DNA of 64,000 nucleotides from Carpediemonas membranifera BICM (Eukaryota > Protista > Fornicata), in assembly GCA_019828565.1 (NCBI GenBank), contig JAHDYR010000012.1, forward strand, positions 124,001-188,000, read 5' to 3'. Both the position numbers and the translations under genes were made by a program. The notes below the pieces were generated by a model. The model was given only the letters and a program-made list of their open reading frames with translations, was not told the origin of the DNA and ran no database searches. The stretch's first letter is position 1; each line of letters opens with the position of its first letter. Shown piece by piece: positions 1,095 through 39,400 of the stretch.

Positions 1095-1204
1095 TGTAGT
1101 GTCGCGTATACATTATATATTGGGTCTCGTTTAGTCATGTCGACACCCATTGTGTCGACTCTATAAATCACTCTCCCCTCCCGTTAGTGTTGTACAACAC
1201 CACA
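1095..1204 (+). repeat. 5' LTR of element B (110 bp)
   Basis: Direct repeat of 20444-20553; contains GTCGACAC-ccatt-GTGTCGAC. Confidence 0.95.
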
Positions 1205-1317
1205 GTAATTACTGCTAGCATGTTCAACGCCAACGCTCTGGACTTATTCTCCGCTCCCTATCTTGATGGAATGACCGCCTCTCAGTGGCAGTCCTTCCGC
1301 GAGGCTTATTACGCCTA

Positions 1318-4300
1318 TGTCACCGGTCTATAAACTGCTCCGTCCAGTTTTGACCACTTTTACCCCGCTGCGGTTTACTGTAAATGATTTCAACCGACAA
1401 TACTAGTATTAGCTGTGCTGATGTCGTTAACTGTTCAAATTCCTGAGCTTTCTCCTTCAAATCTAACACTAGAGACTCTTGAGGAGTTTGAGCGCCGAGC
1501 AACGATTTTTACTATACAAAACCCAAGCATCCCACTGTCCGTCCTCATTGAGGAGTCATTTGCCCTCGAACTCAAGGCCGAAGGCATAGACACATCCGAC
1601 AAGAACTACACTCTCAAGAACTTCACCGAATGGTGTCGCCAGCGGCTCCTTCCCCACTCCATCTTAGCACTCGTCGAAGAGCTCCAAGACCTTCGTTTCC
1701 CCATGGTGCCGAGCACCGCACGCAACTTCGAAGCTGGCACGAGACTACAAGCGGCAGCATTCCGCAAGCGCATCGAGCTCTACTCCAAGACGCCAGACCC
1801 AGAAGGGTTCTTGGAACCCATCGACGACAACCCCAATGCCGACGAACTGCTCGCAAGCTTTGATAAGCTGGCTGCACGGCTCTTCAGGGAGTCCCTGAAC
1901 CCGACAGCATTCCGCAAGAAGGCACAGACCTTGCTTGCTCTCCACAACGTCAAGACCTTCGAGGACACCGTAGCGGTGGCTCTTAGGGCTGCTAGGGCGT
2001 ATGACCATGATCAACCCCTCTCGCAAACCCCGGCCGGCGGACCCAAGGCCCCGGCCCAGGCCAGGAAGGCCCAGTACCGCCCGGACGCGGCCAAGCGCCC
2101 GCCGGCCGACGGACCCAAGAAGCCGTCGCGCCCCTGTCGTTTCTGTGGCGGTCCCCACATGGACTTCAGATGCGATAAGCACCCCCGCTACAGCGAGAAC
2201 AACAACGCCGACAGCGCGTCGACTAACGAGAAGGGCGGGAAGGGTCCACTGACGACCCCCGCTACTGTAAAAGGCAAAACTTACTCGTTCGTTGTAGACA
2301 CTGGTGCAAGCCGAAGCTTCATTAGTTCGAAGGCACTACGTACCCTACCCAAGGACACAGTGCAGACCTCTCTCGAGGAAAAGATCAAGGTCACGCTAGG
2401 AGACGGACGCTCCCTCGTGACAGATCAAGCAGTCACATTTAAGGCAGCATTCCCAGCACTAGGTGTCACACCGTTGGAGGTTACATGGAAGTACTACGTA
2501 CTCCCCGGTGAGTTCTTCAAGGTTCTCATCGGGTGTGACTTGCTGAGGTCACTCGCACTCATTGGCGATGGCACACTCAACCTTAACCTGCACAAGCTCT
2601 CCTCAATTGAGGGAGGACGAGGACTGGCTGCCGTTCTACCATGAATATCTCACGGAGGACGCAAACATGGCGATAACCGACGACTACTGTGGTGTCCACG
2701 TCCCGGAGTCGAAGATCCGACCCGAGATTCTCGAGATAATCAACTCATTTGACGATATCTTCGAGGAAGAACTACCCAAGGAAGGGTCTCGACTGGAACC
2801 CATGTCGATTGAACTGATAGACGAGCGGGCAATTGTACAATGCCGCGCTCGCAGACTCGACCCAGTGACCCAAGGCCTGGTGTCGACAGAGCTAGAACAA
2901 CTCAGGCGAGACGGGATAATCCAGGACTCGACTGGGCCGTACAGCTCGCCGATCGTAGTAGTCAGGCAGGGCCACAAAGGATCGACCAAGATCCGTCTTT
3001 GCATTGACTACAAGGAGTTAAACTCCAAGACAGTGAGGGATAACTTCCCCCTGCCTAACACGCGCGAGTTTGTAGACCGAGCATCAGGCTGTAAATACTT
3101 TGCAGGCCTAGACCTCAGACAAGGCTACTACCAGATGCGGATGCACGAGGAAGATATCCCCAAAACCGCTTTTGTCACTCCAGACGCATACTGCGAGTTC
3201 ACCAGATGTCCATTCGGCCTGATGAACGCCCCGGCGAGATTCCAACGCGCCATGCAGAAGGCGTTCGCCGAGGTCCTCCACAAAGGGGTGGACATCTATC
3301 TTGACGACATCTTGATTTACGCCAAGACCGAGGCCCAGTTTCTCACCCTGATCAAAACCGTCTTCAGGATCTGTAGACATTATTCACTGCGCCTTAAAGG
3401 CCCGAAGTGCACGATAGGCTCAGCCCACGTCGAGGCCGTCGGGTATATTGTCTCGGAGAAGGGGAAACAACTTGCCCCAGAGAAGGTAGAGGCGGTAAAC
3501 GCCATACCGCTCCCGTCCACCGCAAAGGAGCTTCAGAGGACACTGGGATCATTCAACTATGTCGCCCAGTTCGTCCCGGACTCATCACGAATCCTCAAAC
3601 CTCTCAACGAGATGCTAACGGCACAGGAGAACTCAAAGAACATAACTTGGAACCCCAAACAAGAAGAGGCGTTTACAACGTTCAAGGAGAGACTCAGCTC
3701 AGACACAGTCCTCCATTTCCCCGACTTCTCAAAGAAGTGGACCCTCGAGACGGACGCGTCGAACGACGGACTAGGGGGCATTCTGTTCCAAGAAGACGAC
3801 TCCGGCAACCGAGAGATCGTCTCGCTCTTCGCAAAGTGTCATACGCCAACCCAGACTAGGTGGCCGACCTACGAACAAGAGCTTCATGCTATCATCTTTT
3901 GTCTCACGAGACCTGACATGGCTCAACTTTTCCGCCTCAAGGACAACATACAGATCCGCACCGACCACCAGAATCTGGTATATCTCATGCAGAGGAAGGA
4001 GCTTTCCAAGAAACTCCTCAGGTGGACGTCTGTCTTGTCGGACTACAACATTACGATCGAGCATATTGCTGGAGAGACAAACAAGATGGCAGACATGCTG
4101 TCGCGTATCCTTCCCCGAGGGGGACCTCGGGCCGCAGCTGAACCTGCTAGAGGCGGAGGACGCCGGCCCAGGGCTGACCCTTGAGTTGATCCAGGCTGCC
4201 CAGGCCATGGCACCTGGAGTCAACTCGAGTCGGCTGGGAGAAACTAGAGGGAGTATCCATCGAAAACTCGATCTACTTCAAGGACGGAGTGCCGATTATC

Positions 4301-5677
4301 CCCAAGGGAGAGACACGCGACAAGGCCCTTCGGACCGCTCACCAATTTCATACGGGAGCAAATTCAACGTTCCAAGCACTCGCCACGTCTGCATTTTTGG
4401 CCGGGGATGCTCTTGGACGTCAAAAAGCACATCAAGACGTGCCCCATTTGTCTGAAGACTCGCATCAAGGACTACTTTATCGCCCAAAAGGGCCAGACAA
4501 GACGCACCAGACCATGGGAGACAGTGGCAGTCGACACAATTGGCCCTCTCCCAACGGATTCGCTGGGCGCTCGCTACATCATTGTGGCTGTAGACATGTT
4601 TACAAGATACACCGAGCTCGTCGCAGTCGCATCGATCGACGCCGAGACCTCCGCCAGGGCCCTATGGGACCACGTTTTCACGCGACACGGGATACCGGCG
4701 GAGATTCTGTCCGACGGCGGCCCGGAGTACGCGAACTCGATAGTTGAACAACTCACAACGTCATTGAAAGTCGCACACCACTTCACCATCCCGTTTCATC
4801 CACAGAGCAATGGTCTCGTGGAGAGAAGGAATGCGGAGATTGGAAGACACCTACGGTGGCTTGTCCTGGCAATAGCCTACAAAGACCAGTGGTGCGGACT
4901 CCTACCGACGGTCCAGATGATTATCAACGGCACGACACATACGGCCACGAAGTTCTCCCCGCACGAGCTGATATTTGGCCATGAGCACAACATGTTTACA
5001 AGCTGGTGGACGAACGACAACAACTCTCCGATCAGAGATTTCCCAGAGTTCAAAAAGGACCTGGAGCTGGCCCTTAACGCCCTGGAGACCACTGCCAGAG
5101 AGAGTGTGGGCCCGGGCCAAAAGACAATAGTCAACACCGAACTGAAGCCGGGTGACTACGTCCTCTGGAAAGATGAGGCCCCTCAGAAGCTAGACGCGCG
5201 CAACAGGGGCCCATGGAAGGTACACGATGTACTTGATAATAACAGAATAGTCCTGCAGTCGATACTCGACGGATCGACCAGATCAACCCACATTGAAAAA
5301 CTCATGATGTTCGACACGGATGCCGTAACGGACACGATGATGCTTCAACTTGCAAGCTTCGACCAGAAAAAATGGGAGGTAGAGCGAGTAGTATCGGTAG
5401 ACTGGAAAGAAGGGACAGCCGCCATCAAGTGGGTAGGATTCGAAAACATAACGGAAGAACCACTCTCGGGAGTGAAACACCTCGAGGAGATGAAGAGGTT
5501 GGCCCGTAAGGCGAGGAAGAACCTGAAACTCTACTAACCATCTTTTTCCCCCGTTCCTTGCAGGTTGGGGGTTTTCTCATCAAAAAGGGAGGTAGTGTCA
5601 CCGGTCTATAAACTGCTCCGTCCAGTTTTGACCACTTTTACCCCGCTGCGGTTTACTGTAAATGATTTCAACCGACA
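1318..5677 (+). mobile_element. Ty3/gypsy chromovirus C, full length
   Basis: Identical 82-bp LTRs at 1318-1399 and 5596-5677; 4-bp TSD CCTA; PPT AAAAAGGGAGGTAG. Confidence 0.95.
1421..5537 (+). CDS. Element C Gag-PR-RT-RNaseH-IN-chromodomain polyprotein (several frameshifts in this assembly)
   Basis: CRFCGGPHMDFRC, VVDTGA, YLDD, ETDAS, CPIC, VAVDTIGP/SDGG/NGLVERRN, WEVERVV..IKWVGF. Spread over ORFs 1415-2644, 2562-4184, 4289-4747 and 4407-5537. Confidence 0.88.
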
Positions 5678-5903
5678 CCTAGAAAGAAGAAAGAAATTTA
5701 TGGTGCTTGGATTCTGACCCCGGACTGAGCTTGTTTCCCGTTGTCTTGGAACTGAGTGCCCCGGGGTACTGCCTATTTCCCGTGGCAAACTGGTCAGCAG
5801 CGTTTGCCTTGGGCTTTCGGTGCTACTGTCTCCGCGGAAAGCCGATTCCAATCGCCCCAGAGGCCCTGCGGCCATCTCCGTGCAAATATGCTTTCCTGTC
5901 TCC

Positions 5904-8900
5904 TGTCACAGCATCTCCCTCACTCCCAGTGCACTTTAAGGTAAATGGATTTCCCCGTTTTCTGCTGCCATCCGGCACAGTGATCACTCCTGGAAAATGG
6001 TAACGCAGAATCATCTGTTCCTATCTGATCTAGATCCTGTTACGATCAGAACCTTCACTCGGCACTTCCGTGTCCTCAAAGCCCAATTTCCAACTCTTTC
6101 GCCATCCGACTGTATTTCAGAAGAGATTCTTGATGTCCTTGAGCTTCGATATGAAGTTGATCTCTCTTCCGCAACCATTGAAGATATCGAGGCTTCTCTC
6201 CTCACGCACCTCCTACCTCCAACACTCAATGGATGCCTCCGAGCAATGCGTGCCCTCCAGATGTCTAATCACGACAACAAGCTTCACTCGATCCTCTTGT
6301 ACGTCCGAGAGCTCCGTGCGCTCTACAAGCACGCTCTAACGTTCATCCCCGACCACGACCCGCCCAAGCCTGAAGCTGATGATGACGACCCCGACGTAGA
6401 CGCTCTCGCTGAGCTACTGGGCTCCTCGCCATCCGGGCCTAGCCCCGCTCATCGGGGCCTGAGCAAGGTCGCCGCCCGTGTACTCCTCGCCGCCATCAGG
6501 CCAAGTGAGCTTCAAGCTCGCCTCAAGACCGAGGTTGAGCTACAAGGCGCTCGCCTGTTCGAGGATACCGTTCAGATCGTGAAGACCGAGGTCGAGCGCC
6601 TCCAGGCGCTGGCAAGCGATCTGGCAGGCCTCGACATCTCGTCTTTGACACCGTCCACCACGTCAGCTGCCGTGTTGACCTCCGTTGACCGCCCTCGCCA
6701 AGGTGGCGGGCAGAGCCGCCAAGGCCGCCCCGCCATAGGCCGAACACATGGGCTCCCGGCCACACCCTCCAAGACCCCCTGCCCATTCTGTGGTGGTTGG
6801 CATTGGAGGTGGCAGTGCCCTAAGGCCGACGCCGCCCAGCGAGGCTCCACCCAGCAGTCCAACCAGTCGCCGCACCCGGCACAACCGACCGGCCAGCATG
6901 ACAAGCAACAGCCACATACCCAAGCCCGACATACTTCGGGCAACGCCAACCGCCAGCTGCCAGTGCCTCAACCAAATGCGGATCCCACTCAGCTGTCCGA
7001 CCGCCGCGCTGGTAGGATGAACCTCCGCCCCAGCAGCACCCTCAAGAAGGGAAGACCAGTGCATGAGACCGCCCATGCCCAGCCGGTGCAGTCTGTCGAC
7101 GAACCACAGCCCGACTCATCCTACTTCACCGTCCAAGGGAAAGTCAACGGCGAGACGCAGACAATCCTGATTGATTCCGGTTCCGCCCCAAGCTGTATTT
7201 CGCAGTTGTTGGCCGAGCGCCTCAAGGCCACGATCGACACATCCGTCTCAATTGCTCTGTTGGACGTCAATAAGCAGCTTTTTATGACGAAGGGCGTAGC
7301 AAAGGTGAGTCTGAGCCTTCCATCTGCGGGCAACGCCATGGTCACTACCGAGGCCACCTTCCACGTAATCGAACGCGACGATGATCACATACTCGTTGGT
7401 TGTGATATCCTCAGAGCTCTTGGCTTCCTCAGCGCCAAGGGCCTCTTCGTCCCTACAGGCGTCGACTGCAACGAAGACCCCCAGACCACCGAAGGGCTCC
7501 CTCCCCACAAGTACCTAGACCCAGTCCCTGTCGCTGAAGCCTCAGCTGCTCCACAGTTCTTCAGCGATGAAGTGGACGTATGTCCTGATCAACTACACGA
7601 CCCTATCCGTGAGATCCTCCGCAAGCATGACGCCGTGTTCGATCCAAACCTCCCCGAAGAGCCGGCAGCCTTCCCCCCCATGACCATCCCGACCGACGGC
7701 TACATTGTCAACATGAAGCCACGCCCTCTGGCTCCAGCCAAGACGGAGTGGCTGCACGATCATGTCTCAGACTTACGCGACAAGGGCATCACCGAGGCCA
7801 ACACCGGCCCATATGCCAGTCCAGTAGTCCTCGTGCGAAAGGGGGACGCTTGGCGGCTTTGCATCGACTATGTCCTACTCAACAGCCACACCACCCGTGA
7901 TCGACACCCCCTCCCCAACATGCGCGAGTTCCTTCGCCGAGCAAGTGGGTGCGACCGATTTGCCGCCCTGGACCTGACCTCAGGCTATTGGCAGGTGCCT
8001 ATGGCTGACGAGGACAAGGAGAAGACCGCGTTCATCGCCCCTGGCGTGCATGAACAGTTCACCAGGATGCCTTTTGGGCTTGCCAATGCCCCGTCGCATT
8101 TCCAGCGAGGTATCGAGACTATCCTCGGGCCCATCCTCCATAAGGGGGTTGACCCGTACATCGATGACCTCTTCATGTACTCCTCCGAGGAACTTTTCCT
8201 CAAGCTTCTCGATGACACCCTCACTCGCCTGGAAGAAGCCAACGTCCGCCTAGGCGCAAAGAAGTGCCGAATAGGCTATTCCGAGGCCCCCATAGTTGGT
8301 TTCATTGTCGACAAGGCTGGAGTTCACGTAGACCCTGAGCGCACCCGCGCCCTACGAGAGCTTCCCCTCCCCACTGATGTCCACGGGCTCAGGACCGTGC
8401 TCGGCAAGTTCCAGTTCTTAGCCTCATTCATCTCAGAGAAACGCCATGAGCTGTTCAAGCCCCTTACCGCTCTCCTAGAGAAGGACGCCGTCTTCAGCTT
8501 CGGCCCAGCCGAGACTGAGGCTTTCAACACCCTTAAGTCCCTCTTCACCGATGACCTCTTCATCGCTCACCCAGACTTGTCCCTTCCTTGGACCCTCGAG
8601 ACCGACGCTTCCAATGTCGGAGCCGGAGGTGTACTCTACCAGACTCCCAACGACAACTCGGGCAGACAAGTGCTGGCCTATTTCTCTCATACGTTCACCC
8701 CCACCCAGACCAGATGGGCTACCTGCGAACAGGAACTTTTCGCCATCGTATACGCCTTCACGCACCCCTCCCTCACCCACCTTCTGCGCGTGAAGCATGT
8801 AACCCTCAGAACAGACCACCGTAATCTGATCTACATGATCTACAAGTCCGCGACGAACGACAAGATCCTCCGCTGGCGTCTGACGCTAGCCGACTTCAAC

Positions 8901-10483
8901 TTTGAAATCACACACGTTCCCGGGAAGGATAACGTCATAGCTGATTCGCTCAGCCGGTATGGCCACGGCCAGACTACAGCCCAACCCGTCGCCGCCATAT
9001 CTGTCGATGCCCGGTTCAAGGACAGACTGGCACACTTCCAAGGAGAGGACCCGGAGATCAGCAAGCTGCCGGTAGACGCTGATGGTCTCCGACGCCGGAA
9101 CGGAGCCTGCATGATCCCGACCTGTGATCAAACGAAGGGCTTACGCCAAGAGCTTATTGCCATCGCTCACCGTGGCCACCACGGAGCTAGAGCCACGTAC
9201 ACCCGCCTCCGCGATGACGGCTACACCTGGGTCAGCGCGACTCAAGAGATCGCCGCCTACGTCCACTCCTGTCCGATCTGTCTCAAGGCTAGACTCTCTG
9301 AGTTCGCTCAGTCAAGCCTAGGGACCACGGCCGTGTATAAGCCTTTCCACACGGTCGCCATTGACACCATAGGCCCCATCCCCGCAGACATGTTCGGCCG
9401 CAAGTACATCTTCGTCCTTGTTGATATGTTCACCAGGTACACGGAGTTATATGCCAGCGATGAGAACACTGCCGATGCCGCTGCCTCTGCCATCTGGCAA
9501 CAACTTGTCTGCCGTCATGGCATCCCTGCCGCCATTAAGGCTGACAACGGGCCGGAGTACACTGGTGCCGTGATCAAGGCCCTCCTGTCTGATGCCGAGA
9601 TCACCGAACAACACACTCTCCCGTATCATCCCCAGTCCAACGGCGTTGTTGAACGCCGTAACGCCGAAGTGATGAAGCACCTCCGCTGCCTCACGCTCAA
9701 CTTTAACAAGTTTGACGAGTGGAGCAGGCTTCTCCCTGCCGTTCAGCTTTTGCTGAACACTTCTATCTGCTCTGCCACAGGCCTCACCCCCCACAGCATG
9801 CTTTACGGCGAGCATTTGGACCCGTCCGCCACTAGAGCCCGGCTACTCGCCCCGACTGACCCTACAGCTTCCGAGACAATCCTATCCTCCCATCGTGAAT
9901 ACCTAGACAACCTCACTAACCACCTGAAGTCCCTTTCCAAGAAGGGGGGAGGAGACGCAACGTAAGGTTGTCGAGAAGCGCCTTGCCAAAGGAAAGACCG
10001 CAGAGACCGAGCTCAAGCCAGGTGACCTAGTCCTCGTACAGCGCAACAGGACCCCCAAGTTGCACGGTCACCTGGGACCCTACAAGATCCTCGAGATCCT
10101 CGACCACAAGGCCGTCGTTATCGCCGACATCATCACGAACACCACCACAACCGTCCACCGGGATCACCTGCTCCCGTTCCACGTGAACTACCACTTCAAC
10201 AAGCTCCGCCAGCTAGCTTCCTCAGACGAGGAGACTTTTATCGTTGAGAAGATCCTCAAGCACCGCGTCAAGGACGACATCCTCGAACTGAAGGTGAAGT
10301 GGGAAGGCTACGACGAACCCACCTATGAGCCGGCGACTGCACTCTCCGGAGTCTCGCTCGCTCGTGCTTACCTTAGAGCCAATAAGCTTCGGCTTAGGGG
10401 GGCAAGATGTCACAGCATCTCCCTCACTCCCAGTGCACTTTAAGGTAAATGGATTTCCCCGTTTTCTGCTGCCATCCGGCACA
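5904..10483 (+). mobile_element. Ty3/gypsy chromovirus D, full length
   Basis: Identical 76-bp LTRs at 5904-5979 and 10408-10483; 4-bp TSD CTCC; PPT AGGGGGGCAAGA. Confidence 0.95.
5997..10443 (+). CDS. Element D single gag-pol polyprotein with chromodomain (one frameshift near 9950; stop lies inside the 3' LTR)
   Basis: CPFCGGWHWRWQC, LIDSGS, YIDD, ETDAS, HRGHH..CPIC, DNG, NGVVERRN. ORF 10060-10443 has GPY and FIVEKILKH..VKWEGY. Confidence 0.92.
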
Positions 10484-11406
10484 CTCCCTGAAAGTCCGGC
10501 AACTATCCGGGGAGCCTGGGGGTCTGTCCTCGGGGCATTGACAGGCAGGATCGTCCTGCAGAACCTTGACTATGACACTCCTTGCTTCCCTGCAGTCCTT
10601 GTAGAGCCGTTCAGCCACGGCACCCTCTCGTCTGTCCGGTTCCCCAATTCCATGCCCCCTCGACTCTGTTAAGAAGCCTACCCGAAGGCGGGGAAAGTGA
10701 CTAAGTCCATGCTGTCTACCCCGGTTAGGTGGCGTGGGTCAGGGCATGGGTGGTGTACCCCCAGGCACTAGGCCTGGTTGTCCTGTTACCCCTTACAACA
10801 TTTCGCTTGCACTACATGTCCTTGGTTTCCCATGTCGTTAACAAGGGCGGCAGGGGCACCTGTGCCCCTCCGACCCCCGTGGCCAGTCCCTGCAGTTTCC
10901 TTGGGGTCCCAACGAGTGGTGCAACCATATGAATATGGATTTCCTTGACCTTATCCTTGCTCTGTCCTTGTCGCATGTCCTTTCTTTCTTATTTCTGGTC
11001 TGTCCTTCCTGTTCTTTCCTTGCAGTCGTTCCTTCCCTTGCTTTGGTTCCTGGCTACCGGGATACGTGGGGCCTTTCCTCACTGATCCCAGGAGCTTAGC
11101 ACCCAGCGAGGGTGGTCCATGGCTGATTCCTTGTCCATCCCTTCCCAGTCCTGGAGTCAGGGGTTCATGACATGCTTCTATTCCACCTTGAAGCTGTTGT
11201 AAACCTTTGCCAGTTCCCGTAGTCCTGCCGTGAGGCCTTCCCAAATGTCCTCCGAGCCCCTTATTATTAGTTGCTGCAATTCTAGGATGGGTCTTTCCTG
11301 GTACCATTCGCCCTGGGGGCCCTGCCTTACTTCCAAGTCCTTAGTTTTGTGCTTCGCTGCTGTCCACAGCTTTGTCCAAGCTTCTCCCCTGTCTACTGCC
11401 GGGCAT

Positions 11407-24687: not shown

Positions 24688-24798
24688 TTGAAGTAATATT
24701 ACTGTGGTTTGACTATACCTGTTTTACTGGGAGAATAGACTTCGACACAGGGGTGTCGAAGTCAATCCATAAATGTTCTTAAATTGTACTGACTGACA

Positions 24799-24913: not shown

Positions 24914-24928
24914 TGTAAGTAACGTTAC

Positions 24929-25030
24929 TGTGGGTTCGTGAGAACAAAGCTTTACAAAGAATAGAGCTCGACACCCATGTGTCGAGCTGGACGACTCAAG
25001 ACTATTAAATAATCTATTGATGAACCAACA
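24929..25030 (-). repeat. 5' LTR of element A (~102 bp)
   Basis: TG..CA bounds, internal AGCTCGACAC-ccat-GTGTCGAGCT, adjacent palindrome and gag ATG. The partner LTR is outside the window. Confidence 0.8.
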
Positions 25031-25915
25031 GAGGTTATTGAGCTTAAGAGCTCCTAGGTGCTGAAAATGACCTCCATTGGCCTCAATAGGCCTCGTTGGC
25101 GAGATACGAGAACTTTCACGAAAGCTTCGGATCTTGTGGTGTTGTAGTCCGTTAGGGACAAGAAAGCTTTACAGGGAAAAGAGACGACACCAAATGTGTC
25201 GACAGAAACCTGAAGACGATGTAAATAATACAACTATGTAAATATTGGGTAAGACCCACGACACCGCCCCTCCATGGACCCCAAAGGGGCCATGGCCTCA
25301 GGCGTATGCCACTCGAACGAATGTGCGATGAGGGACTTGACCAGTCCCGAGACCTCCGATGCCACTCATTGGTCTACGAGACTCTGTACCATGGCAGGGT
25401 ACAGGGTGAATGCCTTGTTCAAGTCGGGAGCCAGAATTAGCGGGGTGAATCTGAAAGATTCGGAAAATATCTGCGGATCTCAAAAATCCTATCGTGGTAC
25501 CACTTGTTAGCGCGCTGTGTAATTAGAATGATCTTACGTGAGGCATTCCGCCCCTCCACGGTCGTAAAACGGCCGTTTGAATATTGATTAGATCAAATGA
25601 GCGCCTAAAACTGCTCACTGTGATGATCTTTGTGTTTCTCTTGGTATGTACTTCACGTCGCCGTCCTTATTACATAGAGATCGAAAAACGTCATTAGAAG
25701 CCTCAATTCGGCTTCGTTCGCGAGTTCTCGCGTTTTTTTGCTCTCGACGGTGCGACGTTCTCTCTCGCGGCTGCAAAAGGCCGCGTTCATCCTTAATAAC
25801 ATCAATCGGGCTTGAATTAGCCGTAAAACAGTGTCTTTCAGGTTCCATTGAGGTTGGTTGCTACTTCTTTCGAGTTGTTGTTTTCTCAGTGAAAACGGGA
25901 AGTGACGAACGAGCA

Positions 25916-27170: not shown

Positions 27171-27198
27171 AGGTTTGGATTGAGTAGATGCTGAAGGT

Positions 27199-30100
27199 TT
27201 ACAGACCGGCTCGCTTGGCCTCGTCTGACTTCAGGAATATGTCTAGCGCCTCTAGGTCCTTGACTGACGAATAGTCTTGCCACGTGGCCTCTTCGTCTTC
27301 GCACCCAGCCCAATGGACGAGGTATTCCCGCTTGGACATCGGGCCTCGACCTCGAGATCGACTGATTCGCTCAACTTCCCACTCGTCGTCAGCCGTGGCT
27401 GCGAGTGCTTTGATCTGATCTTCTGTCAGCCTGCCGGGATTGAACTTCCGAACTCTCGATGCGTCTACCGTGATCGCTTTCGAGTTGTCCTTCTCAGCTA
27501 GGTCTAAAACCTTATACGCGACAACGACACCGTGTTGTTTCACTCCGGCGAGCCTTCGCATTGGCCCTCTCCATCCAGGTGACAACTTGTTCGGTGGTCT
27601 AGAGGGGTACTTGACTAGGACGAACCTGCTAATAATCTCATTCCTCGAGGCAGTAGCCTTTGCGAGGGCGTCCTCTCTCATCGCCTGGACTCGGCTGCTG
27701 GCGAGTTGGACAGCCGCTGCGGCCGCTTCCCTGTGAGACTCACTCGCGCTCGCTGTACTAGAATCAGTCACATACACGTTCTGTGGTATTCTCAGGTCGT
27801 ACCCGAGAACTATCTCGGCTGGTGACAGGCGTGTAGACGTGCGCGGGGATGAATTAACGATGAACTGGGCGACAGGTAGATTCTCGATCCAGGTTGACCC
27901 TCTGAGCTGAAACTTACGCGCCTTGAGGATGCGTAATACTTGCTGGTTGGCGCGCTCTACCATCCCATTGGATTGCGGGTGGTGAGCCGTGGTAATATGG
28001 ATCTTGAACCCCATCTCATCTGCGATGCGCTTGAAGAGTTGGTTCTTGAACTCTGGTCCTCCGTCGGATTGGAGAACCTCAGGGCACCCGAAACGCAATA
28101 TCCAGTTGTTGACCAGGGCGTCCGCTGCTGCCGCGCCGGTGGTACTCGAAGATGCGACTAGCTCAGTCCACCGACTGCACATGTCGATCATGACTGTGAT
28201 GTAAGCCTTGCCGTCGACGGAGGGGAAAGGCCCCATCGTGTCAACTGCCACCCTACGGAACGGGCGATCTACGGCTGTGTGCAATCCTGACGGGCTGTCA
28301 ACCGGAGGGCGTCTAATCACCTGGCACACCGGGCAGTTTTCGATGACCTTGCTGACAGTCTCACGTGATACTGACTTGCCTTGGTCCTTGAGTCGTTCAG
28401 TAACTACACGTCGGGAGAGGTGGGCCCCGGCGGTGAGGTGTTCTGCTTCAACGTCATCTTCTGATGCGGACTGCATAACGTACACTCGCGATAAGCCGTC
28501 TGCCCCACCGTTATCAAGGCCAGCGACGTGCTTGACGTCGAAGTCCATGTCGGACATAGCCTCAGCCCATCTGCGGACCTTGGCGTTAGTCGACTTGTAC
28601 ATGTAAATCAGGTTGCGATGGTCCGTGAGAAGGGTGAACTTTCCCCAGGAGAGGTACTTGTTCCATCGCTTAATGGCGGCGACGATGGCGAATGCCTCCT
28701 TCTCTCCGACCGACCATCGCGATTGCACTTGGTCAAAGGCCTTGCTCATAAAGCACACGGGTTGGCCTTCCTGCAATAGCACAGCGCCGTAGCCAACTCC
28801 TGACGCGTCGGTCATGATGGTGTGTTCCTTGGACGCATCGAAGATGGCGAGTGCTTCTGCTTGGGCGAGGAGTGTCTTGACTTTGCGTAGGGCTTGCTCT
28901 TGCTCGTCGCCACCCAGCGGGATCTTGGAGGCCATCGCTTGAGTTAAGGGGTGTACTACTTCTGCGAAACCAGGGACATGATCCCGGAAATAGTTAAGAA
29001 ATCCGACGAGCGCTTGCATTCCCTTGACCGACTTAGGCATTTCGAGATCCAGGATGTCTTGAATGCGGTCCGCTGCGATGCGTTGACAGCCATGGGATAT
29101 GACCCTGCCCAGGAACTCGACCTCGGCCCTCGAAAACTGGCACTTGTCACGGTTGAGTTGTAACTTGATCTGTCTAGTACGCTGCAGCACGCTCTCCAGG
29201 TTCTTGAGGTAATCCTCCTCGTTTTCCCCGAAGACAATGATATCGTCGATATAGATATAACAGGCGTGACCAACCAGTTCGGCGAAAGCCGACTCCATGG
29301 CACGCTGAAAGTGAGCTCCTGCGTTCCTTAGCCCGAAGGGCATCCTAGTGTATTGATATTGACCTAGAATGGTGGTGAACGCAGTGTACTTGCGGCAGCG
29401 TTTGGTCAGTTCGACCTGGTGATAACCCGACGACAGGTCTAGTGTGGCGAAGATCTTCTTGTTGGGTAGTTGGGCGATCACCTCGTCGATCATTGGGATC
29501 GGGTAGTCGAAAGTGGGGGTGATCTCGTTGATCTGCCGGAAATCCACGACGAAGCGCGACTTCCCGCCCTTCTTCGGCACCGTCATGGCCGGGGATGCGT
29601 ACGGTGAGTTGCTTCTCTCGATAAACCCCTTCAAGGACAGCTCGTCGATGTGCTCCCGTATTATGTCGACCTTGGCTGGTGGGACGAAGTATGGTCTGGC
29701 GTTGACCACTCGGTCCTCGCGTAGGATGAGGTCATACGGCTCGAGGCGGCTGGGTTCGCTACGGTCCTCGAACACGTCGCTATAACGTCTGATTAGCTCG
29801 GCCTGCCGGTCGATGCTGGTCTGCGACAAAGAAAACAATGGTGCCTGATACTTGTACACGTCCGGAATCTCGATCTCGTCATCATCTTGCTCGTCTGTGT
29901 AGGCTTGGGGAAGGATTCCCAGTGCTACCATGTCTGGATATCCGATAATCATGTCGAACTCAGTGTCAAGTAGCAGCATACGTGGCTTGTAGGAGCACGC
30001 CTTGGGTGTAAACGCTGACGCTAGCAGTCTTACGTCGCCTTCAACAGCGCCTTGCGCGTGAAGAATACCCTTGTTGGCGGTACGGATCGGAATAACCTCG

Positions 30101-31149
30101 GAGCTAACTTTTGTCAGCTTGGACGCCCACGTGCTCTTAATGATCGTGACTCCGGCACCTGAATCAAGTAGAGCAGTGAGGTTGTGACCATTAATCTGGA
30201 CTTTGATCAAGGGAACAGATGGCTTAGTCTCGGTCTCGCCCTTAGTCTTTGACGGTTCGCCCTCGGCCGGTGACTCCTTGGAACTTAAAACACACACGCA
30301 CTTGGAGGATTTACAGTAATCCTCCAGGTGGCCGACACGACCACACTTCTTACATGTGTGCTTGGGCTTCTTACACTTGAACACCGAGTGACCCTTGCCA
30401 CCGCAGTTATAGCAGGTGTAGTTAGAGTAGTCCTTTGCCGGCTTCTCCTTCTTGATTGCCTTGTGGCCCTTGTTGGTTTCAGCCGACCGGTTATCGGACG
30501 AGGGCTTCTTCGGGATCACAGACGAGTCGTGTCTGCGGTCATGGCGGGACGTGTAGGGTTGACGAGAGGGAGCGTCTTCGAAAGCGCTTAGTAGATCCCG
30601 TGACTCTTGGACTTCACGTGCTAGGGCTAGGACGGCGGGCATAGCCTTTTCCAGAGGCTGGTCCTCGATGAGCTCTTGGATGCGGTACATGGCCTTGGGG
30701 TTGCTCTTAAAGGCACGCGTATACGCCTCCTTGAGGTTGTCCTCGTTGAGGGACTTCCCATCGAACAGGGACAAGAGGAGAGTGAACTTCCGATTGACGC
30801 GTGCGACCTGTACCGTGTCGAAGCTGTTGGCTCTTAGACGGAACAGCTGGAGGCGTGAGGTCTTGGTTCTGGGTTGCAGGGCTTGTCCGAGCCGCTTGAG
30901 AGTTCTCTGATCCTTCAGATCGCGGATGTTCTTCCTTGAGGCTACTAGGGGAGTGTGATCGTCGTCTTCGTCCTGCGTAGTGGATAGGATCGTGGCAATG
31001 AGGTCTTGTACCGAGCTATCAATCAAGTCTGAGATATCCCGATGGCCTCCGTAAGCGCGATAGTCGCGGAAGGCCTCGGCGAAAGTGATGAGAGCCTCAA
31101 CTGACGGAACCGTTAGTAGAGGAGGTATAAGGCGTTTCTTATCGTTCAT
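27199..31149 (-). CDS. Element G intact gag-pol polyprotein (1316 aa) with chromodomain
   Basis: 2 CCHC knuckles, LLDSGA, YIDD, MTDAS, CPVC, SDGG, NGMVERAN, WEVERI..YLVHWAG. Confidence 0.96.
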   Translation of the reverse strand: MNDKKRLIPPLLTVPSVEALITFAEAFRDYRAYGGHRDISDLIDSSVQDLIATILSTTQDEDDDHTPLVASRKNIRDLKDQRTLKRLGQALQPRTKTSRLQLFRLRANSFDTVQVARVNRKFTLLLSLFDGKSLNEDNLKEAYTRAFKSNPKAMYRIQELIEDQPLEKAMPAVLALAREVQESRDLLSAFEDAPSRQPYTSRHDRRHDSSVIPKKPSSDNRSAETNKGHKAIKKEKPAKDYSNYTCYNCGGKGHSVFKCKKPKHTCKKCGRVGHLEDYCKSSKCVCVLSSKESPAEGEPSKTKGETETKPSVPLIKVQINGHNLTALLDSGAGVTIIKSTWASKLTKVSSEVIPIRTANKGILHAQGAVEGDVRLLASAFTPKACSYKPRMLLLDTEFDMIIGYPDMVALGILPQAYTDEQDDDEIEIPDVYKYQAPLFSLSQTSIDRQAELIRRYSDVFEDRSEPSRLEPYDLILREDRVVNARPYFVPPAKVDIIREHIDELSLKGFIERSNSPYASPAMTVPKKGGKSRFVVDFRQINEITPTFDYPIPMIDEVIAQLPNKKIFATLDLSSGYHQVELTKRCRKYTAFTTILGQYQYTRMPFGLRNAGAHFQRAMESAFAELVGHACYIYIDDIIVFGENEEDYLKNLESVLQRTRQIKLQLNRDKCQFSRAEVEFLGRVISHGCQRIAADRIQDILDLEMPKSVKGMQALVGFLNYFRDHVPGFAEVVHPLTQAMASKIPLGGDEQEQALRKVKTLLAQAEALAIFDASKEHTIMTDASGVGYGAVLLQEGQPVCFMSKAFDQVQSRWSVGEKEAFAIVAAIKRWNKYLSWGKFTLLTDHRNLIYMYKSTNAKVRRWAEAMSDMDFDVKHVAGLDNGGADGLSRVYVMQSASEDDVEAEHLTAGAHLSRRVVTERLKDQGKSVSRETVSKVIENCPVCQVIRRPPVDSPSGLHTAVDRPFRRVAVDTMGPFPSVDGKAYITVMIDMCSRWTELVASSSTTGAAAADALVNNWILRFGCPEVLQSDGGPEFKNQLFKRIADEMGFKIHITTAHHPQSNGMVERANQQVLRILKARKFQLRGSTWIENLPVAQFIVNSSPRTSTRLSPAEIVLGYDLRIPQNVYVTDSSTASASESHREAAAAAVQLASSRVQAMREDALAKATASRNEIISRFVLVKYPSRPPNKLSPGWRGPMRRLAGVKQHGVVVAYKVLDLAEKDNSKAITVDASRVRKFNPGRLTEDQIKALAATADDEWEVERISRSRGRGPMSKREYLVHWAGCEDEEATWQDYSSVKDLEALDIFLKSDEAKRAGL

Positions 31150-31644
31150 GGCTTGAATTTCTAGAAATGTAGTCCGTTAGGGACAAGAAAGCTTTACAGG
31201 GAAAAGAGACGACACCAAATGTGTCGACAGAAACCTGAAGACGATGTAAATAATACAACTATGTAAATATTGGGTAAGACCCACGACAGTGTTGGAAAAC
31301 ACAAATGGCAAGGAGAGCGATTTATAGAGTCGACACAATGGGTGTAGACATGACTAAACGAGACCCAATATATAATGTATGCGCGACACTACAGATCTTC
31401 GACGGGATTCTTCCTCGCAAGCGGTCCATTAGTCTCAATTAAGCAACATCAAGCTTCTCAGACAGCAGTTTATAGGTTAGGACGTGCTAAGGTCCCGATC
31501 AGATGGGGATCATTGGCGCCAGCGGCGACGACGAGCCAGCGCCTCGAGGGGTGCCACAGCCGTTCCACAAAGCTTGCCAAATCGATTCGTCGGTTCGATC
31601 AAGGCTACGGTGTCAATAATGTTTAATGTCCATCAACCAACAAG

Positions 31645-35688: not shown

Positions 35689-36449
35689 TCACATCATGAC
35701 GTCAAACGGCCCTGTGTTGGCGAATCCTGGGTGCAGCTCGCTCCAGTTGAGACTGCCGAGTCCGTCCATCAGCAGACTACCGCTGCCATTGATACCACTG
35801 GACAGGGCAGGATCAGCAGCACGAGGGTCTGCCTGTTCCTGGATGACTTCGACTGTCTTGCCGGCGCCCTCGGCCTCTTGGGGGCCAAGGACCGGCGTGG
35901 CGTGACCCCCGTGATCATCCGGCCTCATGGCCACTGGGTTGAACGAGGCGGTGTCTGCAGGCAGTCCGTCCAGCGGTGTGAACGGGAACTCCGTCTGCAC
36001 GAGCGGATTGGGGGCATACTCGTTGTATATGTTGTTCAAATACACTTGTGAGTTCGCAGCTTCGCAGATGTCCTGGGTAAGCCCCTCCTGCGTCTCTGGA
36101 GTGTACTTCCTGAGGTGTGCGGGGTTGTAACCGGCTGGTGTGATCTCTCTTATGCCCAGAGAGGTCGAAAAGACACGGATGCTCGTCCGAAAGCAGGGAA
36201 AGCTCTGGAATTCTGACTCTTTGGGCGGTACGAAGTAATATTGCTCGTATAATACTTGATTCGCATCCTTTTTCTTGCTGTGAAGCCATCTAATCAGCCG
36301 TTTTGTATGAGCTATCCTACACTGGTTCGCCAAGCGCTGGGACAGGAGCTCCTGTACCTCTTTGTTCTCTACAAATTCATTCCAGTTGTCCTCGAATGTG
36401 TAAGTGTCCTCTGGGAGACCTGGTGGAGTCTTTACGCCCAACATCGACG
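35689..36449 (-). CDS. Hypothetical protein; 5' end abuts or is interrupted by element I
   Basis: Open frame of ~250 codons; no recognisable domain. Confidence 0.45.
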
Positions 36450-39400
36450 TGTGGTAAACTGCACTTGATTGATTTCTCTGACCGAGACTACAGAAGCTTC
36501 TACAGTCCATATATGAGTCAAATTACATCGCCGGGACGAAGTATCGTCTCGTGGTCGAATTTTATCGACGACTACAAGGGTACTCTACGATCAAGGGAGA
36601 AACCCGACTTACTGGTATCCTACCTAAGCAGAGAAGAGGTTCGCAGCATGCTCCAAACTCTGATCACTGCGAGCTACACTTATGAAGCCATTGATGGCAC
36701 TAAGCACAAGTTCGTGTCGAGCGACCAATTCCTCGACTACCTTGCGAGCGAGACGCAACCTTACCTAGTTAGACACCGCCAGGCCGTGTCACAATCCGAG
36801 AGTGAGCACAAGCTCGCCGCCACTGAGCGCGAGGTTCGGATATTAGACGACCTCATCGCCGAGATGCTAGCCGCTGGTTATACGAATGCAGACGTGGCTG
36901 AACACCGAAAGAACAAGATCGCTCTCCTCGCTCAATCCTCTACTCTGGCCGCAGCGGTCAAGACTGAAGGACCCGCCAAGCTCCTCGACACCACTAAGCG
37001 GATCGAAGCCCTCACCCTACAGGCGAACAACACCCTAGCATACATGAGGCTGGTGTTACACACCCATACGCAAGAGAGCCTATCCCACCTCCGCGCTCTA
37101 CCCAAGGTGGTGGTTGGGACATCGAGGACGAGCACCATCGCCTCTGCGCTGGCCTACGTCGCGCAGTACGACAGAATCGCCGGGCTGGCACTTGTGGACG
37201 AAGATAGGGCCGACTCGAACGTGCAGCGAGACCTGAAGCAGACCCTCATGAATGGGCTGAACTTCCCTAACGCCGAGAGTCGTGCCCTAGTCTTCGGCGA
37301 GGGATCGTCCAACCTCATAGCCTCAGAGGACACTACACTCACCGACCTTATCGCAACGGCCCGGACCGCCCTGGTCGAGGCTGACACGTCGATCCGTAAG
37401 TATGACCGATTCTACGTCACTACTGCCACAACCATCGACCATGAAGAGACGCCAGGCGCCTCTAAGAGCAAAGGCGCCACTCCGCACCACCAGCCTCAGA
37501 GGCAGGAGAAGCCTCACGCCTCTCGTGAGACAAAGCACAAAGCATGCGACTGGCACTTCACGCGTGGCCACTCGAACGCTGACTGCGAGGTCCTAAAGCA
37601 GCTCACGTCCGACCCGTCTAAGATAACAGACAAGCAAGTACTTATCCACCTCCTCAGAGCAAGCGAGAAGCATAAGACCAAGCACAAGGAGGCCCTGCGC
37701 ATTCGCGACGAACGCAAGCTTAAGGAGCTCGCCCAGGGCACGACTCTACTCATGCAGTCCCCGCAGGCACCCATAGCCACGGAGATCCCCCCCGACTGCG
37801 ACGACTATCTCACTCTCGTCGAGGTTGAAGGCAAGCCTATTGTCGCGGACATGGACACCGGCGGCAAGCAACTCCCCTTCATCATCCGTAAGGACGCCGC
37901 GCAGTATCTGGGCATCAAGCAATCTAAGGCTTCCCCAGTAGTCCTCAACGCCATCGAGGGACCAACAGCCCTCGAGGCGCAGCCCTCCGAGCCGTTTAGG
38001 CTCCGCCTCATAGATCCGAACTACTTCCCGATCCCCACGACCATCACCATCACAGCCCACATTGTCGACACCTTCCCCGTCGCATGCCTCCTGGGGAAGA
38101 GCCTCCTCCGCCGCACCGGAATGGATTTCGGGCCGAACGCCGTAACCGCCGAGGAGCCTCCTCACCTCCATGACGTCTCCAACACCTCAGAGATGCTTAA
38201 TCTCTTTACACCCGACGAGACGGCGGTCCTTCCACAAGTCCATGACAGAGTGGTTGGCGACATACGAGCCAAGTTCCTGCTCTTGCTGGGGACGTTCGCC
38301 TTTATCTTTGGCCCGCTGGGCAAGGAGCCGGCCAAGCTTCCGCCGTACGAGATCCATATCCGCGAGAGTGCCGTCCCTGTGAGGACCGTTCGACGCCTTC
38401 GCAGTGCTGCCCACACTGCTGCAGCAGCGTTCTACATCACGCAGATGATTACTGCTGGGATCCTCGCGACAGTCACAACGGACGAAGGATGGCTGAGCCC
38501 TATCCTCATGGTCCCGAAACCCAGTGCGGACCCGCCTTACAGACTCTGCATCGACTTCAGAGAGCTCAATGAGGCGACAACGGCTGAATGGCATCGCATG
38601 CCCAGTCCTGATGAACTGTTCGAGCAAGTCCGAGGGGCGACCCACTTTGCGAAGTTCGACCTGACATCTGGGTTCTTTCAGCTCTCCTTGGCTGACTCCT
38701 CCCGAAAGTATACGACATTTAGCCACCAAGGTCAGACCCTCCAGTTCACACGGCTGCCGTTTGGGGTTACCAATGGCCCCATGGTCTTTCAGGCCCGCAT
38801 GGAGACCCTTCTGAAGCCCATTCCACACTGCTTGGTCTTCGTGGACGACATTCTACTCTACGCTTCGTCTGAAGAAGAGTTGCTCGGCCAGGTCGAGTCG
38901 CTGTTTGCCGCCCTCGCGGAAGCCAACATTAGGCTGTCACCCACCAAGTCTATCATCGGGGCCTCGGAAGTGGAATACCTAGGCTTTATTGTCTCAGGGA
39001 GTGGGGTCCGCATCGACCCGAAGCGCCTACAAGGCATCACCGACCTTCCCGTGCCGCAGTCCTCCAAGGACGCGAAGCATGTCGTGGGTGTCTTTTCCTT
39101 TATTCGCCAGTTCATTCCCAACTTCGTTGAGAAGGCGCGTCTCCTACAGGACCTCGCGTCTAAGAAGCACGTCTCCAGCGATGACGCCTCTAATTCATTG
39201 TCGATCCTCAAGGCCGCAGCGGCCAACGCAGTTGAGCTCGCTCACTTTCAGCCCGACAAGCCCGTCCACGTGTATACCGACGCATCTAACGTGGGCATCG
39301 GCGCCTCAATTATCCAGGATAAGGGGCCGATCGCCTTTTACAGCAAGAAGCTCTCTGATACGGAGGCCCGATGGACCACCGTCGAGCAGGAGATGTTCGC

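What the first reader, a model, noticed from the sequence alone, without database searches (positions are those of the whole stretch)
1203..36501. Eight divergent LTR retrotransposons replace the tRNA primer-binding site with a perfect palindrome: candidate new priming system
Seen: directly at the inner edge of every 5' LTR, overlapping its last base(s), is a perfect self-complementary 10-12-mer, different in each family. B CAGTAATTACTG (1203-1214); C AATACTAGTATT (1399-1410); D AGTGATCACT (5979-5988); E AGTATTAATACT (17562-17573); F AGTAATATTACT (24692-24703); A AGTAACGTTACT (24918-24929); G ATTTCTAGAAAT (31157-31168); I AGAAGCTTCT (36492-36501). None starts with TGG. The gag ATG follows only 15-21 nt after the LTR, leaving no room for another PBS. 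The palindromes are absent after 3' LTRs and the solo LTR. Position and symmetry are conserved while sequence is not. Established: canonical PBSs start TGG (complementary to tRNA CCA), and Tf1-type chromoviruses self-prime using a PBS complementary to the transcript 5' end; I see no copy of these palindromes inside their LTRs. Inference: an RNA ending in the palindrome could anneal to the same site on a second RNA (or fold back), with its 3' end positioned to copy U5 as minus-strand strong stop. That would mean dimer- or hairpin-mediated tRNA-free priming. I do not recall this being described.
Basis: partly seen in the sequence, partly recalled or inferred. Interest (0 to 1): 0.95.

Follow-up and report, generated by a model that had tools for sequence, protein, structure and literature searches.

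The report
Palindromic primer site in gypsy retrotransposons
A deep group of Ty3/gypsy retrotransposons, seen here in the anaerobic protist Carpediemonas, has a perfect 10-16-base palindrome, different between families, exactly where other retroelements bind a host tRNA to start DNA synthesis, which suggests a tRNA-free, probably RNA-dimer-based priming mechanism that nobody has worked out.

Summary
All eight 5' LTRs in the window end in a perfect 10-12-nt palindrome that includes the last 1-2 LTR bases. No 3' LTR or solo LTR has one. Across 16 elements with both LTRs resolved, 16/16 inner edges of the 5' LTR carry a palindrome of 10 nt or more. The three control edges give 0/43.

The window is from Carpediemonas membranifera or a close relative. 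The elements are ordinary Ty3/gypsy, some with a chromodomain. They have tiny LTRs (43-127 nt), normal polypurine tracts, and gag ATGs 16-22 nt after the LTR.

The same feature is present in at least 50 of 81 related loci examined. All fall in one RT clade. A fish and a Cystoisospora relative outside that clade have normal TGG-type tRNA sites. Near-identical elements differ by paired changes that keep the symmetry.

Two known alternatives were tested and not met: Tf1-type self-priming, and the hairpin partner described for fungal GalEa copia elements (Donnart 2017), which have a similar palindrome that includes the last A of the LTR.

Best reading: the palindrome is the minus-strand priming site and pairs with its own copy on a second element RNA. 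The mechanism is inferred, not shown. I rate it a new variant of non-tRNA priming.

The parts
1203..1214 (+). Palindrome of element B (CAGTAATTACTG); overlaps the last 2 bases of the 5' LTR; gag ATG at 1220-1222
1095..20553 (+). Element B. LTRs 1095-1204 and 20444-20553; polypurine tract about 20436-20443; interrupted by C, D and E; IN plus chromodomain at 18618-19967
1399..1410 (+). Palindrome of element C (AATACTAGTATT); starts at the last A of the 5' LTR; gag ATG at 1421-1423
1318..5677 (+). Element C. LTRs 1318-1399 and 5596-5677 (82 nt); TSD CCTA; polypurine tract 5582-5595; PR-RT-RH-IN split by frame breaks
5979..5988 (+). Palindrome of element D (AGTGATCACT); gag-pol ATG at 5997
5904..10483 (+). 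Element D. LTRs 5904-5979 and 10408-10483 (76 nt); TSD CTCC; one ORF of 1322 aa (PR-RT-RH-IN); polypurine tract 10396-10407
17562..17573 (-). Palindrome of element E (AGTATTAATACT); gag ATG at 17552-17554 on the minus strand
13241..17697 (-). Element E. LTRs 17573-17697 (5') and 13241-13365 (3'), 125 nt; TSD CGGC; RH-IN ORF 13594-15537
24692..24703 (-). Palindrome of element F (AGTAATATTACT); gag ATG at 24685-24687 on the minus strand
20982..24798 (-). Element F. LTRs 24703-24798 (5') and 20982-21077 (3'), 96 nt; TSD GCTT; internally deleted (gag plus an IN C-terminal piece only), so non-autonomous, yet LTRs, palindrome and polypurine tract are intact
24918..24929 (-). Palindrome of element A (AGTAACGTTACT); gag ATG at 24911-24913 on the minus strand
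24929..25030 (-). 5' LTR of element A (102 nt). The body runs leftwards, is interrupted by F and by B, and continues as gag/PR at 132-1088 (minus strand) and off the window
31157..31168 (-). Palindrome of element G (ATTTCTAGAAAT); gag-pol ATG at 31147-31149 on the minus strand
25143..31288 (-). Element G. LTRs 31168-31288 (5') and 25143-25263 (3'), 121 nt; TSD GTGT; one ORF of 1316 aa (PR-RT-RH-IN-chromodomain). The same family is in Carpediemonas membranifera JAHDYR010000062
36492..36501 (+). Palindrome of element I (AGAAGCTTCT); gag-pol ATG at 36513
36450..40999 (+). Element I. LTRs 36450-36492 and 40957-40999 (only 43 nt); TSD CGACG; ORF with PR-RT-RH-IN; polypurine tract 40946-40956
31312..31393 (-). 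Truncated B-like solo or 3' LTR (96% identical to B LTR positions 1-82), split by the G insertion; its end lies at about 25134-25142 and is followed by no palindrome

Best explanation
The palindrome is the minus-strand primer-binding site of a tRNA-independent priming system.

**Shown**
- It occupies the exact U5/primer-site position at single-base precision in every family.
- Nothing else fits between the LTR and the gag ATG.
- Plus-strand priming looks canonical (polypurine tract next to the 3' LTR).
- Self-complementarity, not sequence, is what is conserved.

**Inferred**
- The only partner for such family-specific sites is the same site on another copy of the element's own RNA.
- Two co-packaged genomic RNAs would pair palindrome to palindrome (10-16 bp).
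- The element's RNase H would cut the RNA duplex, as Tf1's enzyme does at its self-primer.
- The new 3'-OH, lying on the partner's site, would be extended through U5 and R to make minus-strand strong-stop DNA.
- Plus-strand strong-stop DNA would copy the palindrome from the primer, so the second transfer works as usual.
- Dimerisation and priming would then be one event, and each family's own palindrome would keep priming within the family.
For: - Position: 16/16 5' LTR inner edges against 0/43 control edges. All 8 window elements fit. The left end of the palindrome lies at -1, -2, -3 or 0 relative to the LTR end in 20/20 curated elements.
- No alternative site: the gag ATG is at +16 to +22 and none of the sites begins with TGG.
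- Canonical polypurine tracts, TG..CA ends, TSDs and PR-RT-RH-IN order.
- Breadth: 44 of 81 loci pass a strict screen and at least 50 pass on inspection. All 54 labelled rows lie in one RT clade of 81 rows, support 98.
- Relatives outside that clade have ordinary tRNA-type sites.
- Covariation: 40 distinct central 12-mers with 3-4 pair types at each paired position. Pairing falls to chance (23-30%) beyond 6 pairs.
- L039 and L040 are 97.8% identical with identical flanks. Their palindromes differ only by a symmetric swap of the two central bases. L049/L053 and L017/L019/L036 show further paired changes.
- The internally deleted element F keeps LTR, palindrome and polypurine tract and still has identical LTRs.
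- Thermodynamics: the self-duplex is -10 to -18 kcal/mol, and it forms in the predicted dimer minimum-energy structure of 18/20 leaders.
- Precedent for RNase H cutting an RNA duplex to make a self-primer, and for priming in trans in Tf1: Levin 1996 and Haag et al. 2000. Only the titles were seen, in reference lists. The details are from my own knowledge.
Against: - There are no experimental data. No RNA 3' ends, strong-stop junctions or transcript starts were available (look-ups found nothing).
- The host tRNA set could not be examined.
- A palindrome is also what a dimeric DNA-binding protein or a pure dimerisation signal would use.
- The metagenome survey selects for palindromes of 10 nt or more, so 100% pairing of the inner five pairs is partly circular. 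The independent evidence is the position and the paired changes.
- A primer made of the whole R-U5-palindrome fragment raises the question of how plus-strand strong-stop synthesis stops after the palindrome.
- AU-rich duplexes of 10-12 bp are weak without a chaperone.
- In 2 of 20 leaders the predicted dimer does not use the palindrome.
Confidence: 0.45

Rival explanations
1. The palindrome is only a dimerisation or packaging signal, like the retroviral dimer initiation site. Minus-strand synthesis is primed by something else that leaves no recognisable site.
For: Self-complementary sites are the classic dimer-linkage elements. The self-duplex forms in predicted dimers. Covariation fits equally well.
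Against: A dimerisation site has no reason to abut the LTR end to the base in every family, whereas the U5 boundary is set by the primer's 3' end. No other candidate priming site fits in the 15-21 nt before the ATG. Retroviral sites of this kind are short palindromes in a hairpin loop and sit beside a primer-binding site, not in place of one (own knowledge; also stated in PMC5445492).
Confidence: 0.2
2. The palindrome acts at the DNA level as a promoter, initiator or downstream element, or as the binding site of a dimeric protein. It sits just upstream of gag because LTRs and 5' UTRs are tiny in this host.
For: The sites are AT-rich in a genome of 55-60% GC and lie 3-10 nt before the ATG in many elements. 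A 43-nt LTR leaves little room for a promoter.
Against: The sequence differs in nearly every family, and only the symmetry is kept, including paired changes in 97.8%-identical elements. A protein site would conserve sequence. Host genes in the window have no such palindrome before their ATG. In other clade members the ATG is 40-110 nt away, but the palindrome still abuts the LTR.
Confidence: 0.1
3. Priming is by an intramolecular hairpin of the GalEa type. The palindrome pairs with a complementary copy a few dozen bases downstream on the same RNA, and the hairpin supplies or presents the primer.
For: Fungal GalEa copia elements have the same palindrome, including the last A of the LTR, plus a partner 12-41 bp downstream.
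Against: No second copy lies within 70 nt downstream in 20/20 elements. The best matches have 3-5 mismatches in 10, and all p values are 0.17 or higher against shuffles. In most window elements coding sequence starts 3-10 nt after the palindrome.
Confidence: 0.07
4. The primer is a host RNA: an internal tRNA fragment, a tRNA half or another small RNA that pairs with one arm of the palindrome.
For: Half-tRNA priming exists in copia, Ty5 and some plant lineages. Many of the sites share AGT...ACT ends.
Against: None of the sites begins with TGG. The arms differ between families within one genome (AGTAAC, AATACT, ATTTCT, AGAAG, AGTGA and others). Host-RNA pairing would not explain why the second arm always mirrors the first, or the paired changes.
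Confidence: 0.05
5. Tf1/sushi-type self-priming: the 5' end of the element's own mRNA folds back onto the site.
For: These are Ty3/gypsy elements, several with chromodomains, without a tRNA site, like the Tf1/sushi/Tcn1 group.
Against: The complement of the site is absent from the element's own LTR. The longest matches are 3-6 nt, which is chance level, in 19/20 elements. The exception is one 8-nt match in L032, inside a tRNA-like segment.
Confidence: 0.03

Closest known systems
Fungal GalEa (Ty1/copia) 'Conserved Hairpin Site' (Donnart et al. 2017, BMC Genomics 18:410, PMC5445492)
   Same: No tRNA primer-binding site. A short motif directly after the 5' LTR is a perfect palindrome once the final A of the LTR is included (ACTGATCAGT or ACTAATTAGT). 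The authors proposed that it replaces the primer-binding site. The mechanism is unknown.
   Different: GalEa is copia-type (IN before RT). Its palindrome is nearly the same in 85% of families, and it has an inverse-complementary partner 12-41 bp downstream that makes a hairpin. Here the elements are Ty3/gypsy, the palindrome differs between families (40 variants), it is 10-16 nt long, and no downstream partner exists.
Tf1/Tf2/Tj1, sushi, Maggy and Tcn1-type self-priming chromoviruses (Levin 1995, 1996; Lin and Levin 1997)
   Same: Ty3/gypsy elements that do without a tRNA. The primer comes from the element's own RNA. An RNA:RNA duplex at the primer site is cut by the element's RNase H. Trans priming between co-packaged RNAs has been reported for Tf1 (title seen).
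   Different: There the site is complementary to the first bases of the mRNA, inside the 5' LTR, and is not palindromic. Here no such complement exists and the site is complementary only to itself.
Retroviral dimer initiation site (kissing-loop palindrome)
   Same: A self-complementary sequence in the 5' leader that can pair two genomic RNAs.
   Different: It is about 6 nt, sits in a hairpin loop downstream of a normal tRNA primer-binding site, and is not at the U5 boundary. Here the palindrome takes the primer site's place and abuts U5.
Skipper elements of dictyostelids (Spaller et al. 2016, PMC5006619)
   Same: Chromoviruses that have lost the TGG site, with no LTR complement. [quoted passage not shown]
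   Different: Skipper has a polypyrimidine stretch after the LTR, not a palindrome.
copia / Ty5 / Osser half-tRNA priming
   Same: A primer-binding site that does not begin with TGG.
   Different: It is complementary to an internal part of initiator tRNA-Met, has the same sequence across families, and is not palindromic.

Membership tests
Ty3/gypsy (Metaviridae) LTR retrotransposon | Direct LTRs ending TG..CA, with a short target-site duplication | tested here: met
   Seven 100%-identical LTR pairs, TGT..ACA, with 4-5-bp TSDs
Ty3/gypsy (Metaviridae) LTR retrotransposon | Domain order PR-RT-RNase H-IN | tested here: met
   Pfam hits in this order in D, G, I and C
Ty3/gypsy (Metaviridae) LTR retrotransposon | Polypurine tract directly upstream of the 3' LTR | tested here: met
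   G-rich purine runs abut every 3' LTR
Ty3/gypsy (Metaviridae) LTR retrotransposon | Primer-binding site complementary to a tRNA 3' end (starts TGG) | tested here: not met
   None of the post-LTR sequences begins with TGG. Outgroups L085 and L086 do have one.
Chromovirus | Chromodomain at the C-terminus of integrase | tested here: inconclusive
   A Pfam Chromo hit in G and B. None was reported for D, I or the C integrase ORF. Many metagenome relatives carry PF00385.
Tf1/sushi-type self-priming | The site after the 5' LTR is complementary to about 11 nt at the mRNA 5' end, inside the LTR | tested here: not met
   The longest complement in the element's own LTR is 3-6 nt in 19/20 elements, which is chance level
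Tf1/sushi-type self-priming | RNase H cuts the RNA duplex to release the primer | not testable with these tools
   Needs biochemistry
GalEa-type Conserved Hairpin Site | A palindrome directly after the 5' LTR that includes the LTR's final A, with no tRNA site | tested here: met
   The left end is at -1 in 13/20, at -2 or -3 in 6/20 and at 0 in 1/20
GalEa-type Conserved Hairpin Site | An inverse-complementary second motif (CHSeq2) 12-41 bp downstream that forms a hairpin | tested here: not met
   No second copy within 70 nt in 20/20 elements
GalEa-type Conserved Hairpin Site | Ty1/copia polyprotein order | tested here: not met
   RT precedes IN
Retroviral dimer initiation site | A short palindrome in a hairpin loop, present in addition to a primer-binding site | tested here: not met
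   There is no separate primer-binding site. In predicted monomer folds the palindrome mostly pairs with itself or lies open, not in a conserved loop.

The most novel reading that the evidence does not exclude
A third general way of starting retroelement DNA synthesis, beside host tRNA and Tf1-type fold-back. Two genomic RNAs would pair through a family-specific palindrome at the U5 edge, the duplex would be cut, and each RNA would prime on the other. Genome dimerisation, partner choice and priming would then be a single step. On this reading the mechanism is ancestral to a large, mostly uncultured-protist clade of Ty3/gypsy elements, and it arose independently, or was retained, in fungal GalEa copia elements.
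Probability: 0.4. Interest if true: 0.85.

Novelty: new variant of a known kind. Interest (0 to 1): 0.72.

Why it matters
- **Priming is a fixed point of retroelement biology.** Almost all LTR elements and retroviruses depend on a host tRNA, and hosts exploit that dependence through 3'-tRNA fragments that target the primer-binding site (review PMC7472051, listed).
- **A clade that primes on its own palindrome would be free of that dependence.** It would also show how dimerisation and priming can be merged.
- **It could explain the unsolved GalEa motif.**
- **There is a practical consequence.** LTR-annotation pipelines that require a tRNA-type site will miss or misclassify these elements. They appear to be very abundant in environmental protist DNA: hundreds of metagenome relatives, none from a named genome.
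- **It is cheap to test.** The paired, family-specific code lends itself to compensatory-mutation experiments.

Tried and rejected
- **Tf1-type complement inside the LTR:** absent.
- **GalEa-type downstream partner:** absent.
- **tRNA genes:** none in the window and one tRNA-Glu in 50 loci. A host-tRNA comparison was therefore not possible.
- **Rfam:** no family hit in the window.
- **Exact-protein look-ups for the D and G polyproteins,** done to find transcript-derived contigs and so define R: nothing on record.
- **Kipferlia relative L084:** the contig lacks the 5' end, so it is uninformative.
- **Literature searches** for palindromic primer-binding sites, for the motifs themselves, for Carpediemonas retrotransposons and for elements lacking a primer-binding site: only the GalEa paper, and a bivalve TRIM paper that cites it.
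- **Levin 1996 and Haag 2000:** not held. They are cited by title only.
- **Wobble (G-U) test to separate RNA from DNA pairing:** uninformative. The positions flanking the palindrome on the left are the fixed LTR end, and no wobble pairs occur inside.
- **Handling of sequences:** The fish element L086 was inspected only for its LTR and primer site. The three RT rows with an in-frame stop went into the tree with X at the stop.
Full report
**1. What is in the window**

The region 1-41,000 is a pile of nested Ty3/gypsy retrotransposons in a genome of 55-60% GC.

Seven pairs of 100%-identical direct repeats of 43-127 nt mark elements B, C, D, E, F, G and I. All repeats begin TGT and end ACA. They are flanked by 4- or 5-bp target duplications, and a G-rich polypurine tract precedes each 3' copy.

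Element A has only its 5' LTR in the window (24929-25030, minus strand). Its body is interrupted by F and by B, and B in turn holds C, D and E.

Pfam gives protease, RT, RNase H and integrase in that order, with a chromodomain in G and B.

The right-hand third of the window holds host genes typical of an anaerobic protist, including an Fe-hydrogenase-flavodoxin fusion. The G-type LTR and its palindrome recur, with 98% RT identity, in Carpediemonas membranifera contig JAHDYR010000062. The window is therefore from that species or a very close relative.

**2. The observation**

Each of the eight palindromes is perfect and sits at the stated coordinates. It begins with the last base of the 5' LTR, or the last two bases in B.

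The gag ATG follows at +16 to +22. None of the sites begins with TGG. The 3' LTRs and a truncated B-like solo LTR are not followed by palindromes.

Perfect palindromes of 10 nt or more occur about once per 900 nt in the window, as in shuffles (71 observed, 65 +/- 7 expected). Eight of eight at one defined position is therefore far beyond chance.

For 16 elements with both LTRs resolved, the inner edge of the 5' LTR has a palindrome of 10 nt or more in 16/16. The other three LTR edges have one in 0/43.

**3. How wide it is**

The closest relatives of the D polyprotein are unnamed proteins from a metagenome assembly (PPCM01, 60% identity). Next comes a Carpediemonas protein at 39%.

Their contigs show the same anatomy. 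One has an 86-nt LTR followed by a 12-nt palindrome starting at the last A of the LTR. The Carpediemonas one has an 88-nt LTR followed by AAGTAATTACTT.

A scan of public metagenome contigs with an alignment of these polyproteins gave 80 loci. I applied a strict screen that required three things:
- a perfect palindrome of 10 nt or more;
- a CA context;
- position directly upstream of the start of a long polyprotein ORF.

It was passed by 44 of the 81 loci held at that point (80 metagenome loci plus the Carpediemonas locus L003). Inspection adds at least seven more. Most of the rest are contigs that lack the 5' end.

On an RT-RNase H tree, all 54 rows labelled as palindrome-bearing fall in one clade of 81 rows (support 98). 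This is a FastTree tree with local support values only. A fish element (LTR 1801 nt, site starting TGGCGC) and a Cystoisospora element (site starting TGGTGCC) lie outside it and have ordinary tRNA-type sites.

The top 120 relatives of one freshwater member are all unnamed metagenome proteins. The hosts of most of the clade are therefore unknown.

**4. What is conserved**

Among 59 elements there are 40 different central 12-mers. Each of the five inner pairs uses three or four pair types. The sixth pair is complementary in 81%. Beyond that, pairing drops to chance at 23-30%.

The inner five pairs are complementary by the selection rule, so the independent evidence is the position and the behaviour of close relatives:
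- L039 and L040 are 97.8% identical over 6.5 kb.
- They have identical sequence for 60 nt before and 33 nt after the site.
- Their palindromes differ only by a swap of the two central bases, which keeps the symmetry.
- L049/L053 and the L017/L019/L036 series show further paired changes.

Selection therefore acts on self-complementarity, which points to base pairing rather than recognition of a sequence.

**5. Known mechanisms tested**

- *Tf1-type self-priming* needs a complement of the site inside the LTR. The longest matches are 3-6 nt, at chance level, in 19 of 20 elements. The single 8-nt match, in L032, lies in a tRNA-like piece of a 224-nt LTR.
- *The fungal GalEa copia elements* are the one published case with a palindrome that includes the last A of the LTR. 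They have an inverse-complementary partner 12-41 bp downstream. No such partner exists here in 20 of 20 elements.
- *Host genes* in the window carry no palindrome before their ATG.
- *Known RNA families*: Rfam finds nothing.
- *tRNA pairing*: a tRNA 3' end cannot pair with a site that lacks TGG, and family-specific symmetric sites cannot all match one host RNA. A direct comparison with the host tRNA set was not possible.

**6. Most likely mechanism**

The boundary between U5 and the primer site is created by the 3' end of the minus-strand primer. A feature that abuts the LTR end to the base in dozens of divergent families is therefore most simply the primer site itself.

Its only constant property is that it pairs with itself. 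The partner is most simply the same site on a second copy of the element's RNA.

I propose the following steps:
- Two genomic RNAs pair through the palindrome.
- The RNA duplex is cut by the element's RNase H, as in Tf1 (Levin 1996; title seen, details from my own knowledge).
- The new 3' end is extended over the partner's U5 and R.

Trans priming between co-packaged Tf1 RNAs has been reported (Haag et al. 2000; title seen).

The self-duplexes are worth -10 to -18 kcal/mol. They form in the predicted dimer structure of 18 of 20 leaders. This is plausibility only, since any palindrome would do the same.

The non-autonomous element F keeps LTR, palindrome and polypurine tract and has identical LTRs. 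That fits a cis-acting replication signal.

The different palindromes of nine families in one genome would confine priming to RNAs of the same family. This is inference.

Nothing here shows the cleavage, the primer or the dimer. I put the specific model at about 0.45, and the weaker claim that the palindrome is the site where a non-tRNA primer starts minus-strand synthesis at about 0.7.

**7. Open problems with the model**

- How plus-strand strong-stop synthesis stops after copying the palindrome, if the primer is a long RNA fragment.
- Where exactly the cut falls: at the 3' end or at the centre of the palindrome.
- How a 43-nt LTR (element I) can hold U3, R and U5. A likely poly(A) signal sits at LTR positions 5-10, judged from similar motifs after host stop codons.

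**8. Novelty**

Non-tRNA priming is known in several forms: Tf1/sushi/Tcn1 self-priming, half-tRNA priming and the Skipper polypyrimidine site. A palindrome overlapping the last A of the LTR was described in 2017 for fungal copia elements, without a mechanism.

I found nothing on such a site in Ty3/gypsy elements, on its variation between families, or on a clade-wide distribution. The library searched lacks most subscription journals and Repbase reports, so an earlier mention cannot be excluded.

I therefore rate it a new variant of a known kind.

**9. Handling notes**

The fish element was only inspected for its LTR and primer site. Rows with in-frame stops entered the tree with X at the stop.

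Noticed in passing
window 36450-36492 and all LTRs listed under parts: The LTRs are extremely short (43-127 nt) and the pairs are 100% identical, so the insertions are recent. In element I a GTAAAC motif sits at LTR positions 5-10, and similar motifs follow host stop codons. That leaves almost no U3, so where its promoter lies is unexplained.
   Followed up: partly
window: LTRs of A (24929-25030), B (1095-1204), E (17573-17697), F (24703-24798), G (31168-31288): These five LTRs share a perfect mid-LTR hairpin, (G)TCGACAC-N4-GTGTCGA(C). An AT-rich box lies upstream, and a TGTAAAG / AGTAAAA / TATAAAT-type motif lies 16-36 nt before the LTR end. It looks like a miniature U3-R-U5 layout with a structured R.
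   Followed up: partly
window 20982-24798: Element F is an internally deleted, non-autonomous derivative (gag plus a C-terminal integrase piece, no RT). It has intact, identical LTRs, so it was presumably mobilised in trans.
   Followed up: partly
window 1-41000: The insertions are deeply nested: A is hit by F and B, B by C, D and E, and G sits in a B-like LTR. Chromodomain elements appear to be piling into each other next to ordinary host genes.
   Followed up: no
window 51079-61000: A tandem duplication of about 4969 bp, 99-100% identical, carries an Fe-hydrogenase fused to flavodoxin/FAD/NAD domains. One copy is an ORF of 1163 aa (56236-59727, minus strand). The other is split.
   Followed up: no
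window 46394-50948: An ORF of 1481 aa (46462-50907) has RVT_3 (RNase H-like) as its only Pfam hit. It is flanked by 20-nt inverted repeats (46394-46413 and 50929-50948, 80% complementary). It may be another kind of mobile element.
   Followed up: no
L032:5834-6056: The 224-nt LTR of this metagenome element contains two segments like a tRNA T-arm or B box (GGTTCGAGTCC and GGTTCGATATT). The second overlaps the only 8-nt complement to a palindrome found inside any LTR.
   Followed up: no
L004-L083 (metagenome loci) and proteins P0121-P0240: The palindrome-bearing clade is very abundant in freshwater and marine metagenomes, often as stand-alone 5-6-kb contigs with assembler-length terminal overlaps. 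No top relative comes from a named genome, so the hosts are unknown.
   Followed up: partly
L039:4638-4647 vs L040:3743-3752: Two elements 97.8% identical differ in the palindrome only by a swap of the two central bases (TA versus AT), with identical flanks. This is a clean paired change.
   Followed up: yes
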